From positions 1-64,000 of the IMG/VR virus record IMGVR_UViG_3300050821_002957: 64,000 nt of DNA. One strand, given 5' to 3'. Under the pieces are notes generated by a model. It did not search any database. It was given only the letters and a program-made list of their open reading frames with translations, and was not told where the DNA came from. Positions 725 to 61,680 of this stretch are shown here, one piece after another (the first letter of the stretch is position 1; each line of letters begins with the position of its first letter). A program made the position numbers and the translations under genes.

Positions 725-952
725 ATGCCTATCATCAATGTACCCTCGCCATCGCCAATGTCCGACTACCAAAAGGTCCAATTTGCGACCGAAGTAGCCT
801 TCAATTCACTCCTGGACGAAGCCAAAAAGCTCGGCCTGCCTCTGGAGCCGGTCATGGGCCTGATGTACCTTCCTACTTCAAAGCTAACAAGTGACTTTCA
901 AACGGCTTGCAGAGCCATTTTGGATGCTCTAAAAACGCCTCAAGAAAATTAG
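725..952 (+). CDS. Hypothetical protein
   Basis: 75 aa ORF; TAG stop is the first triplet of the palindromic promoter element. Confidence 0.6.
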   Translation: MPIINVPSPSPMSDYQKVQFATEVAFNSLLDEAKKLGLPLEPVMGLMYLPTSKLTSDFQTACRAILDALKTPQEN

Positions 953-990
953 ATACATCTATTGACTTCCAATTTGGAATTTGATAGCAT
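950..990 (+). promoter_or_regulatory. Early promoter with palindrome (copy 1)
   Basis: TAGATACATCTA-TTGACT-17 nt-TAGCAT. Confidence 0.85.
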
Positions 991-996
991 GTATTC

Positions 997-1446
997 ATGA
1001 GCGAATACACTGAAGCGAAATTAGACGGATCGAAAGTCATCGCCCAATTTGTTCTTGGCGGCAACTCTACCTTCACTGTGGTCTCGAAGCGCACCGGCTC
1101 CAGGCTGACGTTCAAGGTTGGATTTTGGGAAGAACGTAACATGTACATCGTCAAAGTTCTGACCGGCCCGGACAATGAAAACGACTACAGAAAGCTCGGC
1201 AAGATCAAAAACGGCATCTTCTCTTTGACTGATGCGGCTCGGGAGAACGGCTTCACCGTCGAGACTCGTTCCTTCAGCGTATTCTCCTGGCTGCTCCGCA
1301 ATCTCCAGTCCGAAAAGATCGACGATCAAATTGAAATCTGGCACGCTGGTCGCTGTGGCCGTTGCGGACGTAAGCTGACGGTGCCTGAGAGCATCGAGAC
1401 TGGTCTAGGACCGGAATGCGCTGAGAAAGGTTTTGGTGGTTTCTAG
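997..1446 (+). CDS. DUF6011-like zinc-finger protein
   Basis: C-terminal CGRCGRKLTVPESIETGLGPEC motif. Confidence 0.75.
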   Translation: MSEYTEAKLDGSKVIAQFVLGGNSTFTVVSKRTGSRLTFKVGFWEERNMYIVKVLTGPDNENDYRKLGKIKNGIFSLTDAARENGFTVETRSFSVFSWLLRNLQSEKIDDQIEIWHAGRCGRCGRKLTVPESIETGLGPECAEKGFGGF

Positions 1447-1487
1447 TAGATACATCTATTGACATTGATCCCGAAACGAGGTACACT
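1447..1487 (+). promoter_or_regulatory. Early promoter with palindrome (copy 2)
   Basis: TAGATACATCTA-TTGACA-17 nt-TACACT. Confidence 0.85.
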
Positions 1488-1493
1488 TTAATC

Positions 1494-1661
1494 ATGACAA
1501 ACGAAATGATTTGGCAAAACATGACCGACGAACAAAGAAGGGCCGTCCTCGATCAATTCACTATGACTTCCGACATTCCTTCCGACATCAAGTGGGATCA
1601 TCTGGACCACGGAACACGGTCGGCGATCATCTTCACTGGAACGGTCGAGGGAATGAAATGA
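1494..1661 (+). CDS. Small hypothetical protein (55 aa, not in track)
   Basis: MTNEMIWQNMTDEQRRAVLDQF... starts 6 nt after the -10 box; more plausible than track ORF 1511..1747. Confidence 0.65.
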   Translation: MTNEMIWQNMTDEQRRAVLDQFTMTSDIPSDIKWDHLDHGTRSAIIFTGTVEGMK

Positions 1662-1739
1662 TCGTCCTCCTTGCCGTCCTCAAAATTCAGGCTATGTTTT
1701 ACGGTTTGCGTCTGTTATTCTATATCAAGGTGAACCCAA

Positions 1740-1979
1740 ATGACTAACCTTCTCATTTCGCTCGGGGCTGCTGTCATGTGGCTTCTTCGGGTCCAAGAGT
1801 TAAAGTCTGCATTGCCGGAAGAATGCACGATGCTTCCGTCTGAGGGCCGCAGCTTCATCAATCTCCAACATTATGACCCGGACACGATCACTCGAATGTC
1901 AAGTGAGAATTATGAAGCTACGCATACTGCGGCTACTCCTGAAGTGGTCGTACTATCTGAAAATCCAACGGCTGAGTAA
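1740..1979 (+). CDS. Hypothetical protein with N-terminal hydrophobic segment
   Basis: 79 aa ORF. Confidence 0.45.
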   Translation: MTNLLISLGAAVMWLLRVQELKSALPEECTMLPSEGRSFINLQHYDPDTITRMSSENYEATHTAATPEVVVLSENPTAE

Positions 1980-2077
1980 TTGGCTCTGGCATCGTAAGAT
2001 GGACGAGTTTTATCGGACGGTTCACCATCAGTCCGACTACGGCTGGTAATTCCAAAATCTCATGCTATGATATTGGC

Positions 2078-2560
2078 ATGAACATTCTAAGAAACGTATT
2101 GTTAGCGATGCTTCTTGTTGTAGGGATCGGATATTTGATTTCGCTGTTGCCTCCTCCACATCCTCGACACCACAAAGTCAAAATAGAAAAACTGAAGAAT
2201 GGCCAGTATGCCTACAAGGACAAGAAAGGCAACTGGTGGTTTTACGCCAAAAAAGTTGCAAAGGCTGGGAGTCAAACCGATTTTGATTTCGACTTTAATT
2301 TCACCGGAGCCGAGTTTGGTAAGTCAGCGAGTGGATCGGTGCGTATGCCTTCGGGCGGTTCATGGGTTCGTGCGTCAAATCCTCCCAAGCCGGAAGAAAT
2401 CGAAGAAGAGATTGAAGTGTCTGTCGAAGAGAGCGTCACAGGCGAACCGGAAGGGGACACTGACGACGGCGCAGATGCCGATTCAAGCGATTCTGGCGGC
2501 GATGGCGGCGACGGCGGGGGAGATGGCGGTGGGGATGGTGGAGGCGACGGCGGCGAGTAA
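2078..2560 (+). CDS. Membrane-anchored protein with acidic, Gly/Asp-repeat tail
   Basis: N-terminal TM helix; C-terminal GGDGG repeats. Confidence 0.7.
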   Translation: MNILRNVLLAMLLVVGIGYLISLLPPPHPRHHKVKIEKLKNGQYAYKDKKGNWWFYAKKVAKAGSQTDFDFDFNFTGAEFGKSASGSVRMPSGGSWVRASNPPKPEEIEEEIEVSVEESVTGEPEGDTDDGADADSSDSGGDGGDGGGDGGGDGGGDGGE

Positions 2561-2588
2561 TTGACGCTATCCATCCTTGTGGTAGGAT
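2561..2588 (+). promoter_or_regulatory. sigma70-like promoter for NADAR unit
   Basis: TTGACG-16 nt-TAGGAT preceded by TGTGG. Confidence 0.55.
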
Positions 2589-60037: not shown

Positions 60038-60043
60038 ATCTGC

Positions 60044-60050
60044 TATTTAG
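60044..60050 (-). promoter_or_regulatory. Late promoter CTAAATA
   Basis: 6 nt before g14 ATG. Confidence 0.7.
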
Positions 60051-60054
60051 AGAT

Positions 60055-60597
60055 ATGAACAAAATTCAAATGAGCAAATTTTTGTCGTATGTGTTACGGC
60101 ATAAACCAGATTCCATCGGCATCGTCCTGGACAAAGCCGGATGGATCGATATTGATGAATTGATTGAAAAAAGTATTGCAGATGGCAAAGCCTTGGACCG
60201 CCTGTTACTTTACGATATCGTGGCTGAAGACAACAAACAGCGCTACGCCATCAGCGAGGACGGAAAACGGATTCGAGCAAACCAGGGGCACTCTGTAGAA
60301 GTCGATCTGGAATTAAAAGCTGCGATTCCTCCTGTCAAATTGTTCCACGGCACCTATGTGGAAGCGGTCGATACGATCCTAAAACAGGGATTGAAAAAAA
60401 TGAAGCGCCACCACGTTCATTTGTCTGCCGATCCTGAAACAGCGGGAAAAGTGGGAAGTCGGCGAGGAAAAGCCGTTGTACTTGAAATCAACACCAAAGA
60501 TATGGTGAAACGAGGCATCAAGTTCTTCATTACGGCAAACGGGGTATGGCTCACAGATTTTGTCGATCCTGAATTCATTTCAGTTCCAACAACTTAG
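60055..60597 (+). CDS. kptA: RNA 2'-phosphotransferase (KptA/Tpt1)
   Basis: SKFLSYVLRH.P, KQRY, IRANQGHS, FHGT, RHHVHLS. Confidence 0.95.
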   Translation: MNKIQMSKFLSYVLRHKPDSIGIVLDKAGWIDIDELIEKSIADGKALDRLLLYDIVAEDNKQRYAISEDGKRIRANQGHSVEVDLELKAAIPPVKLFHGTYVEAVDTILKQGLKKMKRHHVHLSADPETAGKVGSRRGKAVVLEINTKDMVKRGIKFFITANGVWLTDFVDPEFISVPTT

Positions 60598-60629
60598 AGC
60601 CTTCCCCGAAAAAATTTTTACAAAAAGTG

Positions 60630-60658
60630 TTGACTTGATACATCAATCTTGCTAGGAT
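60630..60658 (+). promoter_or_regulatory. Ku promoter with palindrome variant in the spacer
   Basis: TTGACT-17 nt-TAGGAT; TTGATACATCAA at 60635-60646. Confidence 0.75.
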
Positions 60659-60664
60659 GGGTTC

Positions 60665-61585
60665 ATGGCAACGCATACTAAACCATCCACTCCCGATACG
60701 AACGCTGCTTCTTACCGAGCGTTCAAAACTGTAACCCTTAGCCTGAACGGTATCACCACTTTCCCGGCCAAACTGATTTCTGCGACGAGCGAAGAAAAGT
60801 CTCCCTTCCGACTCTGCGTAGTAAAGGACGGCAAGGCGCTTCCGGTCAGCCAGTTTTACACCGCAGACAACAAGGAATATTTTCCCATCGGCCAACTTGG
60901 TCGTGCAATTGAAATGGGGGAATCTCTAATTCCTCTGACTGCTGAGGAAATCTCCAGCACGAAAAAAATCGACGAAGAAGATGTGGATCACGCCAAGAAA
61001 TCTTTGATCGAACTGACGAGCTTCGTACCGTTGGCGCAGGTTGATCCGGTGTTTTTCCTCAATGGTTACGTAATTCTGCCGAATTTGGACACAAAGGGCA
61101 AAGGCAATCCTCAGGCGGCGAATCTGTATCACATTCTGCTGCGTGCCCTGCTCAAGTCTGGGCGTGTCGGTGTCGCCAAGATGTACGACCGTGATCGTGA
61201 GTACAACATCATCGTTCGTCCAAGCACCGATGGCAAACGGTTGATGCTCCATACGATCTACACCAGCAATGAAGTGCGTGTGATTGATGTTCCTTCTCCC
61301 ACCGTCATTGTGGATGAAATGCTAGTTGACCAGGGTGTCGAACTAATTTCCCTGAATTTTTCCAACTTCGATGCCACGTCGGTGTTTTCTCAGACGGACA
61401 ACGCTGTTGCTTCTCTCGTCGCTCGCAAGAAAGCCGAAGCGAATGGCGAGACGGTTCCCGATACCCCTCACAAGACTTCGACTACCAACGTCGGCAGTTC
61501 TTTGCTGGATTCGTTGACGGCTTCCGTGAACATGGCGAAGGCGAAGAAAGCCACGCCTGCCACCACCACTACAGCGTCGGCGTAG
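60665..61585 (+). CDS. ku: Ku (NHEJ DNA end-binding) homolog
   Basis: LSLNGI..FPAKL.SAT, IEL.SFVP...VDP.FF...Y...P, Y..L..AL..SGRVG.AK...R.REY...VRP, LMLHTIY..NEVR. Confidence 0.88.
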   Translation: MATHTKPSTPDTNAASYRAFKTVTLSLNGITTFPAKLISATSEEKSPFRLCVVKDGKALPVSQFYTADNKEYFPIGQLGRAIEMGESLIPLTAEEISSTKKIDEEDVDHAKKSLIELTSFVPLAQVDPVFFLNGYVILPNLDTKGKGNPQAANLYHILLRALLKSGRVGVAKMYDRDREYNIIVRPSTDGKRLMLHTIYTSNEVRVIDVPSPTVIVDEMLVDQGVELISLNFSNFDATSVFSQTDNAVASLVARKKAEANGETVPDTPHKTSTTNVGSSLLDSLTASVNMAKAKKATPATTTTASA

Positions 61586-61611
61586 TTTTTTCTCTCTCCT
61601 GTTTTGAAAAG

Positions 61612-61640
61612 AAGCGGCCCCTAAAAAAGGCCGCTTTTTT
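61612..61640 (+). terminator. Rho-independent terminator after ku
   Basis: AAGCGGCC/GGCCGCTT followed by TTTT. Confidence 0.85.
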
Positions 61641-61680
61641 AGATGTATCTATTGACATTGGTGACTGGGTTTGGTAAGAT
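61640..61680 (+). promoter_or_regulatory. Early promoter with palindrome (copy 7)
   Basis: TAGATGTATCTA-TTGACA-17 nt-TAAGAT. Confidence 0.85.

What the first reader, a model, noticed from the sequence alone, without database searches (positions are those of the whole stretch)
950..61680. Early-promoter regulon with a 12 bp palindrome TWGATRYATCWA abutting the -35 box
Seen: seven promoters (950, 1447, 10664, 11088, 12607, 13393, 61640) have the palindrome immediately 5' of TTGACW-17 nt-TAnnnT, and the central bases vary (AC, GC, GT) while the arms are kept. An eighth copy, TTGATACATCAA, lies in the spacer of the ku promoter. Known: a centre near -41.5 is the class II activator position, and spacer sites usually repress. 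Inference: one dimeric factor could activate or time the early genes and oppositely control ku.
Basis: partly seen in the sequence, partly recalled or inferred. Interest (0 to 1): 0.72.

Follow-up and report, generated by a model that had tools for sequence, protein, structure and literature searches.

The report
Operator palindrome on leaderless phage promoters
A 12-base palindrome sits beside or inside about 47 host-type promoters of a 405-kb T4-like soil phage whose early messages appear to start at the ATG itself. It is most likely the docking site of one regulator that times early gene expression, and a clade of uncultured giant phages keeps it.

Summary
TWGATRYATCWA occurs 7 times in the window (0.05 expected). 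Six copies abut TTGACW-17-TAnnnT. A seventh, at 10664, has one mismatch. The ku copy lies in the spacer.

The window is the start of a 405,631-bp T4-like soil phage. Genome-wide, 47 sigma-70-type promoters carry the palindrome in two registers: 34 just 5' of the -35 (centre -41.5, behind an A-tract) and 13 in the spacer, so ku is not unique. In 41 of the 47 the ATG sits 5-8 nt after the -10, usually exactly 6, which predicts leaderless mRNAs.

Related uncultured phages (proteins 40-80% identical) keep the palindrome, the -35 and the TGn -10 while flanks diverge. No bacterial genome or cultured relative shows the architecture.

The phage has no sigma region 4, AsiA or MotA. It does have a gp33-like coactivator and CTAAATA late promoters.

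Best reading: an operator regulon for a phage-encoded regulator of host-RNAP-dependent early promoters. Repression is more likely than activation, because the promoters are near-consensus and the register varies.

Two candidate binders exist: a clade-conserved ribbon-helix-helix protein (window 5637-5999) and a ParB/KorB-like protein whose own promoter carries the site. Binding, sign and timing are untested.

The parts
950..999 (+). Promoter unit 1: palindrome TAGATACATCTA 950-961, -35 TTGACT 962-967, -10 TAGCAT 985-990 (TGn), ATG 997. Drives the DUF6011 gene 997-1446.
   Evidence: orthologous promoters conserved
1447..1496 (+). Promoter unit 2: palindrome TAGATACATCTA 1447-1458, -35 TTGACA 1459-1464, -10 TACACT 1482-1487, ATG 1494 (55-aa ORF 1494-1661).
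10664..10714 (+). Promoter unit 3: degenerate palindrome TAGACGTATCAA 10664-10675 (1 mismatch), -35 TTGACA 10676-10681, -10 TACAGT 10699-10704, ATG 10712 (7 nt after the -10). Drives a zinc-ribbon-like 124-aa ORF.
11088..11137 (+). Promoter unit 4: perfect palindrome TAGATGCATCTA 11088-11099, -35 TTGACT 11100-11105, -10 TAATCT 11123-11128, ATG 11135 (66-aa ORF).
12607..12656 (+). Promoter unit 5: palindrome TAGATACATCTA 12607-12618, -35 TTGACA 12619-12624, -10 TAGTAT 12642-12647, ATG 12654 (194-aa ORF).
13393..13442 (+). Promoter unit 6: perfect palindrome TAGATGCATCTA 13393-13404, -35 TTGACT 13405-13410, -10 TAGACT 13428-13433, ATG 13440 (86-aa ORF).
60630..60667 (+). ku promoter (spacer class): -35 TTGACT 60630-60635, palindrome TTGATACATCAA 60635-60646 inside the 17-nt spacer, -10 TAGGAT 60653-60658, ATG 60665. 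Ku gene 60665-61585.
61640..61689 (+). Promoter unit 8: palindrome TAGATGTATCTA 61640-61651 directly after a hairpin plus T-run, -35 TTGACA 61652-61657, -10 TAAGAT 61675-61680, ATG 61687 (152-aa ORF; orthologue in G001 has the same promoter).
5637..5999 (+). Candidate binder 1: 120-aa ribbon-helix-helix protein (N-terminal strand KILLRLP plus two helices, helical C-terminal extension). It has its own SD and a TATATAC-type upstream element, not a palindrome promoter.
19294..60037 (-). Contrast block: late structural genes (gp23-like capsid 20921-22300, sheath 32369-34753 and others). It has no palindrome promoter and is served by CTAAATA late-type elements.

Best explanation
TAGAT-RY-ATCTA is the operator of a global regulon laid over the host-RNA-polymerase-dependent, presumably early, promoters of a 405-kb T4-like soil phage. 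Shown: the promoters are sigma-70 type (TTGACW, 17-18 bp, TGnTAnnnT). The phage encodes no sigma region 4, so the host sigma must read the -35. Strong inference: transcription starts at the A of the ATG, giving leaderless mRNAs. Inference: one phage-encoded oligomeric DNA-binding protein recognises the two inverted 6-bp half-sites. Bound just 5' of the -35 (34 promoters, centre -41.5, in the place of the proximal UP subsite) or in the spacer (13 promoters, centre about -23.5), it most likely hinders sigma region 4, alpha-CTD or the spacer. That would turn early promoters down after their first burst, doing the early shut-off job that AsiA does in T4 and that this phage lacks. Spacer-class genes (ku, an HD hydrolase, a nucleotidyltransferase-like enzyme, the ParB-like gene) would be held more tightly. 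Candidate binders: the clade-conserved RHH protein in the window (5637-5999), favoured slightly, or the ParB/KorB-like protein at genome position 272199-273104, whose own promoter carries the site.
For: Non-random and promoter-locked: 7 versus 0.05 expected in the window; 22 exact copies genome-wide, 21 at promoters; 15 composite hits versus 0 for the control; it is the most over-represented inverted repeat in the genome, 29 times expectation. Two registers: offsets -12 (21 promoters), -13 (5), -15/-16 (5), -18, -10; and +5 to +11 (13 promoters). Stereotyped anatomy: 27 of 30 have a 17-bp spacer, 26 of 30 TGn, 26 of 30 an ATG exactly 6 nt after the -10, plus an A-tract at -55 to -49. Purifying selection: relatives with proteins 40-80% identical keep the palindrome, -35 and -10 while spacers and flanks diverge. 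The palindrome is optional, not part of the core promoter: conserved palindrome-less leaderless promoters exist (NADAR gene at 2561 and its orthologues; tRNA promoters). No sigma70 r4, AsiA or MotA. T4-like late system present. Binder candidates: the RHH is the only RHH in the genome, 25 of 29 homologues hit PF01402, its beta-strand is invariant in 62 clusters, and it is present in all 5 fragments covering its locus. The ParB-like protein scores PF17762 at 26.6 bits against a 22.6 cut-off, matches solved ParB, Noc and KorB chains, and has palindromes or half-site repeats in its promoter in 5 phages. Half-site arrays in direct repeat in relatives fit RHH-type recognition, as with omega, where one dimer binds each 7-bp unit in direct or inverted order over promoters (PMC9499535).
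Against: There is no binding, transcription-start or timing data. No RNA run was listed and the protein-DNA complex job was not folded. The sign of regulation is inferred only from promoter quality and register drift. The A-tract 5' of the site and the strong mode at exactly -41.5 fit a class II activator equally well. The RHH assignment is below Pfam's gathering score and Foldseek found no significant match. The ParB-like gene is missing from the syntenic slot of fragment G003. The RHH gene has no palindrome in its own promoter. A host factor cannot be excluded because the host is unknown.
Confidence: 0.5

Rival explanations
1. Dual regulator of the lambda CI or class II type. The factor bound at -41.5 contacts sigma region 4 and/or alpha-CTD and activates the 34 upstream-class promoters, while the same factor in the spacer represses the 13 spacer-class promoters.
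For: The modal centre is exactly -41.5 (21 of 34). An A-rich tract at -55 to -49 lies immediately 5' of the site, where alpha-CTD sits in class II promoters. Spacer-class promoters mostly have 18-bp spacers and drive different, larger genes. By established knowledge, lambda PRM combines an operator abutting the -35 with a leaderless transcript.
Against: The promoters have consensus -35, optimal spacing and an extended -10, so they do not need an activator. The register varies by up to 6 bp, and one relative uses -13 almost throughout. Conserved promoters without the palindrome are, if anything, weaker by consensus (TTGACG or TTGACC, 16-bp spacer).
Confidence: 0.25
2. The palindrome is read by a host protein (a global regulator or nucleoid protein) that the phage clade exploits or must evade.
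For: The motif is identical across phages whose proteins are only 40-80% identical, as expected if a shared host protein sets the specificity. No binder has been shown.
Against: A scan of 185,579 species genomes for the palindrome + TTGAC + leaderless layout gave 8 scattered hits, all with the AT centre that the phages never use. That is chance level. The phage clade itself carries two conserved sequence-specific DNA-binding proteins with invariant recognition elements. The scan was restricted to one layout, so this is weak evidence.
Confidence: 0.1
3. The sites are parS-like loading sites for the ParB-like CTPase clamp, serving genome organisation, compartmentation or partition of a plasmid-like carrier state. 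Any effect on transcription would be secondary, as with KorB spreading from OB.
For: A ParB-family protein with a GxxRxxAA box (GHTRILAA) is encoded and conserved in the 370-kb and 374-kb relatives. KorB of RK2 is both a partition protein and a global repressor with 12 palindromic OB sites (PMC11790492, PMC13768133).
Against: Virtually every copy is locked to a -35 box within a few bp, which partition sites do not need. No ParA was seen in the regions annotated, though this was not searched for systematically. The ParB-like gene is absent from the syntenic slot in G003.
Confidence: 0.08
4. The palindrome is not a separate protein site but part of RNA polymerase recognition (an extended -35 or proximal UP element), or a copy-pasted promoter cassette.
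For: It occupies the position of the proximal UP subsite, and the block TCTATTGAC is nearly invariant.
Against: The same 12-mer also occurs inside spacers, at offsets from -18 to -10, and as direct half-site arrays. It has dyad symmetry. Copies share nothing beyond the palindrome and the core elements, so they are not repeats of one cassette. Working promoters without it are conserved.
Confidence: 0.05

Closest known systems
KorB/OB (with KorA/OA) global regulon of IncP plasmid RK2
   Same: A mobile element's own ParB-family protein recognises a short palindrome (OB, TTTAGCGGCTAAA; OA is a 12-bp palindrome) at about a dozen promoters and represses them (PMC11790492, PMC13768133). From established knowledge, class I OB sites lie immediately upstream of the -35. 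This phage encodes a ParB/KorB-like HTH protein whose own promoter carries the palindrome.
   Different: This is a lytic-type T4-like phage, not a plasmid. It has about 47 sites with a different sequence. Many sites lie inside spacers. No distal sites were seen. Binding by the ParB-like protein is unproven, and that protein is only 24 bits from KorB.
Ribbon-helix-helix repressors on promoter-embedded short repeats (omega of pSM19035; Arc and Mnt of P22)
   Same: Omega dimers each bind one 7-bp unit, with high affinity for two units in direct or inverted order, over promoters (PMC9499535). From established knowledge, Arc binds between the -35 and -10 of Pant. Here there are two inverted 6-bp units 7 bp apart, direct arrays of the same unit in relatives, and a conserved RHH protein.
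   Different: The RHH here is 120 aa with a long helical tail. It matches PF01402 only below the gathering score. It does not carry the site at its own promoter. The regulon is far larger than any described for a phage RHH.
Lambda CI at OR2/PRM and class II CRP/FNR activation
   Same: The site abuts or overlaps the -35 with its centre near -41.5/-42. Lambda PRM also yields a leaderless mRNA (established knowledge).
   Different: Those promoters have poor core elements and need the activator, whereas these are near-consensus. CRP/FNR sites are 14-22 bp with half-sites about 10 bp apart. No CRP/FNR or CI-type HTH_3 protein was found.
T4 early-to-middle switch (AsiA/MotA) and T4-type late transcription
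   Same: The phage is T4-like: gp23, sheath, gp6, gp25, PolB. It has sigma-70 early promoters behind A-rich upstream tracts, a gp33-like coactivator, and a TATAAATA-like late element, CTAAATA.
   Different: No AsiA, no MotA and no MotA box. The proposed shut-off acts on DNA through an operator, not on sigma. The early mRNAs are leaderless.
Dispersed-operator repressors of large phages (P1 C1 operators; mycobacteriophage L5 gp71 stoperators)
   Same: Tens of copies of one short site are spread over a large phage genome at or near promoters and are read by one phage repressor (established knowledge).
   Different: Those sites are asymmetric and belong to temperate phages' immunity systems. No integrase or lysogeny module was seen here (not searched exhaustively).

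Membership tests
Sigma-70-type promoter read by host RNA polymerase | -35 TTGACA-like hexamer, 17±1 bp spacer, -10 TAnnnT (optionally TGn) | tested here: met
   151 sites genome-wide against about 50 in shuffles. Upstream class: 27 of 30 have a 17-bp spacer and 26 of 30 have TGn.
Sigma-70-type promoter read by host RNA polymerase | No phage sigma able to read a -35 | tested here: met
   PF04545 (sigma70 region 4): no match at E<=1 in the 405-kb genome, while the control genomes all ring.
Leaderless mRNA | Start codon at the transcription start (ATG about 7 nt from the last -10 base, no room for an SD) | tested here: met
   72 promoters have ATG or GTG 5-8 nt after the -10. 26 of 30 upstream-class promoters have it exactly 6 nt after, all ATG. 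These ATGs are the first starts of the ORFs.
Leaderless mRNA | Mapped 5' end at the start codon | not testable with these tools
   No RNA run was listed for this DNA.
Class II (CRP/FNR-type) activator site | Site centred near -41.5 | tested here: met
   21 of 34 upstream-class sites span -47 to -36.
Class II (CRP/FNR-type) activator site | Activator-dependent promoter with weak or absent -35; 14-22-bp site with half-sites about 10 bp apart | tested here: not met
   Consensus TTGACW with an optimal spacer. The site is 12 bp with half-sites 7 bp apart. TTGAT-N2-ATCAA differs from the FNR box TTGAT-N4-ATCAA.
ParB/KorB operator regulon | Element encodes a ParB-family HTH protein | tested here: met
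   G000 272199-273104: PF17762 at 26.6 bits (cut-off 22.6), KorB domain at 18.6 bits (below cut-off). The family profile hits Spo0J/ParB (E 7e-11), Noc and KorB (E 1e-4) chains. GHTRILAA box present.
ParB/KorB operator regulon | That protein binds the palindrome | not testable with these tools
   The complex job was not folded. The only indirect support is the site in the gene's own promoter in several phages.
Ribbon-helix-helix (Arc/MetJ/CopG/omega) repressor-operator pair | RHH fold: N-terminal beta-strand plus two helices | tested here: inconclusive
   PF01402 E 0.002-0.007 for the window protein (below cut-off). 25 of 29 homologues hit it, best E 1.8e-4. The AF2 model has helices 17-30 and 36-49 after an unassigned strand region. 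Foldseek found nothing significant.
Ribbon-helix-helix (Arc/MetJ/CopG/omega) repressor-operator pair | Short (6-8 bp) units used in inverted and direct order at promoters | tested here: met
   The 12-bp site is two inverted 6-bp units. Direct arrays of TAGATAGAA and RYATCTA occur in relatives' promoters.
T4 AsiA/MotA middle-mode switch | AsiA and MotA proteins encoded | tested here: not met
   PF09010: no match. PF09114: only 14 bits, in a His-rich ORF behind a CTAAATA element.
T4-type late transcription | gp33-like coactivator and a TATAAATA-like -10 element before late genes | tested here: met
   PF16805 E 6e-9 at 191704-191997. 40 of 79 CTAAATA copies lie within 30 nt 5' of gene starts, against 0-3 for four control heptamers (TTAAATA, CTAAATT, CAAAATA 0-3; CTATATA 5 of 23).

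The most novel reading that the evidence does not exclude
A clade of roughly 400-kb T4-like soil phages has replaced the T4 AsiA/MotA protein-on-sigma switch with a DNA operator system. A single RHH (omega-like) or ParB/KorB-like protein would read about 50 copies of TAGAT-RY-ATCTA to shut off, and perhaps grade by register, a whole early transcriptome made of leaderless mRNAs. Leaderless starts could give these messages a private route to translation during host shut-off, in a phage that also carries tRNAs, an RF-1-domain protein and YqeY.
Probability: 0.25. Interest if true: 0.8.

Novelty: new variant of a known kind. Interest (0 to 1): 0.62.

Why it matters
The temporal programme of T4-like phages outside the T-even group is poorly understood, because they lack AsiA and MotA. 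This finding offers a concrete, testable cis-element with about 47 copies in two registers, conserved across a clade. It also offers two named candidate proteins for the early switch in giant uncultured T4-like phages. It predicts an almost entirely leaderless early transcriptome, which as far as I know has not been described for a T4-like phage. The compact unit of A-tract, operator, consensus promoter and ATG at +1 could also serve as a tightly defined, regulatable expression part. All of this can be tested in vitro with synthetic DNA and two small proteins, even though the host is unknown.

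Tried and rejected
- The protein-DNA complex prediction (RHH x2 plus a 26-bp duplex) was not folded by the tool, so it is no evidence either way.
- Foldseek of the RHH model against the PDB found nothing significant. The best relevant hit was a HicB3 RHH segment, probability 0.35. A profile search of the RHH against PDB sequences found nothing.
- The genome-contig scan for the composite layout returned 8 chance-type hits with AT centres, so there is no host or prophage lead.
- The viral-contig scan for the 17-mer mostly returned chance or coding matches. 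Only 8 contigs share the architecture.
- Cultured relatives (phiM12, phiN3, DLP_6, S-SKS1, HTVC008M) show no promoter-linked enrichment.
- Full-text search for the three 12-mers gave no relevant paper.
- No RNA sequencing run was listed.
- HTH_3, sigma70 region 4, AsiA and MotA searches in the genome found nothing usable.
- A second operator for one of the two candidates was sought. CAAAATTTTG is over-represented (14 copies against 0.6 expected) but lies in ORFs and is not kept in relatives, so it was rejected.
- Repeat-cassette origin was rejected because copies share only the palindrome and core elements.
- The resemblance to the FNR/FixK box was rejected on spacing (N2 against N4).
- The search for related loci with the RHH protein, alone and as an alignment, reached only G002 and G004.
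- Covariation between binder and site could not be tested, because every homologue found has the same recognition strand and the same half-site.

Full report
**What the window is.**
The 64-kb window is the first part of a 405,631-bp IMG/VR virus record (46% G+C, CheckV 100%) from a soil metagenome. The phage is a myovirus of the T4 superfamily. It has:
- a gp23-like capsid protein, 56-63% identical to those of Pelagibacter phage HTVC008M, Methylophilales phage Melnitz, Synechococcus phage S-SKS1, Stenotrophomonas phage DLP_6 and Sinorhizobium phages phiM12/phiN3;
- a tail sheath, gp6 and gp25 baseplate proteins, a family-B DNA polymerase and a class II ribonucleotide reductase;
- a gp33-like late coactivator.

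The window holds + strand blocks of small genes and tRNAs (1-19 kb and 60-64 kb) around a - strand block of structural genes (19.3-60.0 kb).

**The observation.**
TWGATRYATCWA occurs 7 times in the window against 0.05 expected. The site at 10664 has one mismatch.
- Seven copies, counting 10664, are followed at once by TTGACW, 17 nt and TAnnnT.
- The ku copy fills the spacer of TTGACT-17-TAGGAT, and the downstream gene is Ku.
- In every case the ATG of the maximal ORF follows the -10 by 6 nt (7 nt at 10664). This places the A of the ATG at the expected +1 and leaves no room for a Shine-Dalgarno sequence.
- Five of the seven, and the ku promoter, have a TGn extended -10; 1447 and 13393 do not.

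The description is therefore correct, and the promoters are additionally of the leaderless type.

**Genome-wide picture.**
The whole genome has 22 exact copies and 58 with at most one mismatch. Twenty-one of the 22 exact copies sit at a TTGAC box. The palindrome+TTGAC composite occurs 15 times, against 0 for the reversed control. TAGAT-N2-ATCTA is the most over-represented inverted repeat in the genome, at 29 times expectation.

A census of TTGACN-16..18-TAnnnT gives 151 sites (about 50 in shuffles). Of these, 72 have ATG or GTG 5-8 nt after the -10, and 47 carry a palindrome matching at least 10 of 12 positions. Forty-one of those 47 are leaderless-type.

The palindromes fall into two registers:
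- Upstream class, 34 promoters: the palindrome starts 12 nt before the -35 in 21, 13 nt in 5, 15-16 nt in 5, 18 nt in 1 and 10 nt in 2.
- Spacer class, 13 promoters: the palindrome starts 5-11 nt after the first -35 base, most often 7.

The upstream class is highly stereotyped:
- 27 of 30 have a 17-bp spacer.
- 26 of 30 have TGn.
- 26 of 30 have the ATG exactly 6 nt after the -10.
- An A-rich tract lies at -55 to -49.

The spacer class mostly has 18-bp spacers (8 of 11). Pooled over eight phages (90 sites), the centre is AC (47), GT (22) or GC (21) and never AT. In the upstream class, AC read toward the -35 is favoured 39 to 17.

**What the promoters drive.**
Upstream-class promoters drive mostly small ORFans. 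Some belong to families typical of plasmid leading regions or phage early regions: DUF6011, DUF7007, DUF2958, YodL-like and zinc-ribbon proteins.

Spacer-class promoters drive Ku, an HD_4 hydrolase, a cytidylyltransferase-like protein, a ParB-like protein and others.

No palindrome promoter lies in the structural block. That block is served by CTAAATA: 40 of 79 copies lie within 30 nt 5' of gene starts, against 0-3 for control heptamers TTAAATA, CTAAATT and CAAAATA, and 5 of 23 for CTATATA. CTAAATA is a T4-late-like element.

The phage has no sigma-70 region 4, no AsiA and no credible MotA. The -35 boxes must therefore be read by the host sigma, and the palindrome promoters are best classed as host-RNAP-dependent early promoters. 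That classification is an inference.

**Conservation.**
The same architecture, with both registers, occurs in other uncultured phage contigs:
- IMG/VR 3300048762_000248 (118 kb), 3300037076_000045, 3300037076_000157, 3300033074_000905, 3300006056_000276, 3300014161_000018 and 3300041809_000169;
- a 370-kb ENA contig and a 374-kb JGI contig.

Their proteins are 40-80% identical to this phage's and the genomes are syntenic. At orthologous promoters the palindrome, the -35 and the TGn -10 are kept while spacers and flanks have diverged. One relative uses the -13 register almost throughout.

Conserved leaderless promoters without the palindrome also exist, such as the NADAR gene (TTGACG, 16-bp spacer) in three phages. 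The palindrome is thus a regulatory add-on and not part of the core promoter.

Five cultured relatives lack it. A scan of one genome for each of 185,579 prokaryotic species for the composite layout gave only 8 scattered hits with AT centres, which is chance level. The 12-mers do not appear in the literature held in any relevant context.

**Who binds it.**
Two sequence-specific DNA-binding proteins were found.

(1) Window 5637-5999 encodes a 120-aa ribbon-helix-helix protein.
- It gives the only PF01402-like match in the genome, at E 0.002-0.007, below the cut-off.
- 25 of 29 homologues hit PF01402.
- There are 62 homologue clusters, 57-88% identical, all from this phage clade. The strand KILLRLP and helix B are invariant.
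- It is present in all five fragments that cover its locus.
- Its gene has an SD and a conserved TATATAC element upstream, and no palindrome.

(2) Genome 272199-273104 (- strand) encodes a ParB/KorB-like protein.
- It scores PF17762 above the cut-off, and its family profile matches solved Spo0J/ParB, Noc and KorB chains. It carries a GHTRILAA box.
- Its promoter carries the palindrome in the spacer and is one of the few with a leader.
- Orthologues in four other phages also have palindromes or direct repeats of the half-site in their promoters.
- The gene is absent from the syntenic slot of fragment G003.

The half-sites are 7 bp apart, and in relatives they also occur as direct arrays. This matches RHH proteins such as omega, where one dimer binds each 7-bp unit in direct or inverted order over promoters (PMC9499535). 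It is also compatible with ParB/KorB-type palindromes (PMC11790492). I could not discriminate between the two. The protein-DNA prediction was not run by the tool. No lineage with an altered recognition element was found for a covariation test.

**Mechanism.**
- Shown: sequence, positions, statistics and conservation.
- Strongly inferred: host sigma-70 promoters and leaderless starts.
- Inferred: one oligomeric phage protein binds the palindrome.

I favour repression for five reasons:
- The promoters are near-consensus and need no help.
- They are at least as good as the palindrome-less ones.
- The register drifts.
- A quarter of the sites lie in spacers, the classical repressor position.
- The phage lacks the AsiA route for switching off -35-dependent promoters.

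The rival dual-regulator model is kept alive by the sharp mode at -41.5 and the A-tract just upstream, which mimic class II architecture. Host-factor, parS-like and RNAP-element readings are less likely, for the reasons given under rivals.

**Novelty and verdict.**
Operators at promoters, global repressors of mobile elements and leaderless mRNAs are all known kinds. The new points are:
- this motif;
- its scale (about 47 sites) and its two registers;
- its conservation in an uncultured clade of giant T4-like phages that lack AsiA and MotA;
- its coupling to an almost wholly leaderless early promoter set.

I rate it a new variant of a known kind. Interest is about 0.6, and it is readily testable in vitro.

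Noticed in passing
window 19294-60037 (- strand) and genome-wide: CTAAATA behaves as a T4-late-like promoter element. 40 of 79 copies lie within 30 nt 5' of called gene starts, and several late genes have their ATG 5-9 nt after it. A gp33-like coactivator lies at genome 191704-191997.
   Followed up: partly
window 5593-5599 and 8 other genome sites; orthologous positions in L137-L141: TATATAC is about 8-fold depleted genome-wide (9 copies against about 71 expected). Most copies sit just 5' of genes, including the RHH gene in six phages. This may be a third promoter type.
   Followed up: partly
window 60038-60054: Only 17 bp (ATCTCTAAATAGCAGAT, itself nearly palindromic) separate the divergent ATGs of late gene 59303-60037 (-) and the Tpt1/KptA RNA 2'-phosphotransferase gene 60055-60597 (+). 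No sigma-70 promoter is visible for the latter.
   Followed up: no
window 2594-9452: This early region carries nine tRNA genes (3664-9452), a truncated RF-1/PCRF-domain protein (8644-9156), YqeY (4263-4808), NADAR (2594-3112), an HD protein (3716-4327) and a GIY-YIG/NUMOD3 homing endonuclease (6027-6662). These are translation and RNA-repair accessories next to leaderless genes.
   Followed up: partly
genome 234836-235395 (L127:10836-11395): A promoter with two palindromes, one upstream and one in the spacer, precedes about 480 nt without an ORF. The stretch ends in a terminator-like hairpin. It has no Rfam match and a fold z-score of -2.4, so it is a candidate non-coding RNA.
   Followed up: partly
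genome ends: window 1-1460 and genome 403657-405631: The last 108 bases of the contig are 97% identical to window 1353-1460, and the ends carry paralogous promoter-gene cassettes. Relatives G002 and G004 run straight across the junction with one copy. The genome is probably circular or permuted, and the contig breaks in a duplicated cassette.
   Followed up: partly
genome 109907-112495 (L121:5907-8495, - strand): An 862-aa protein with major vault protein shoulder and repeat domains (PF11978 E 7e-22), conserved at 68% in relative G001.
   Followed up: no
genome-wide, e.g. window 5663 and 23810: CAAAATTTTG occurs 14 times against 0.6 expected, mostly inside ORFs. It is not enriched in relatives, and AAAATTTT is 5-fold over-represented generally.
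   Followed up: yes
L150:9950-10000 and 12530-12590; L148:5900-6000; L141:695-740: In more distant relatives the half-site appears as direct repeats (TAGATAGAAGT TAGATAGAATG TAGATGTAAGC, or four RYATCTA units) in promoters. This suggests that the 6-7-bp unit, not the palindrome, is the unit of recognition.
   Followed up: partly
genome 216464-217108 (L126:12464-13108): The plasmid homologues of the DUF7007 early protein are overwhelmingly from Rhizobiales (Agrobacterium, Rhizobium, Bradyrhizobium). Together with the capsid relatives and the leaderless style, this is a weak hint of an alphaproteobacterial host.
   Followed up: partly
genome 189076-189132 and 273105-273182: The few palindrome promoters that have a leader share a leader motif (GAGTAG ... 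AAAAGGACACC, then 4-8 nt, then ATG). One precedes a SWIM-like zinc-finger ORF and the other the ParB-like gene.
   Followed up: no
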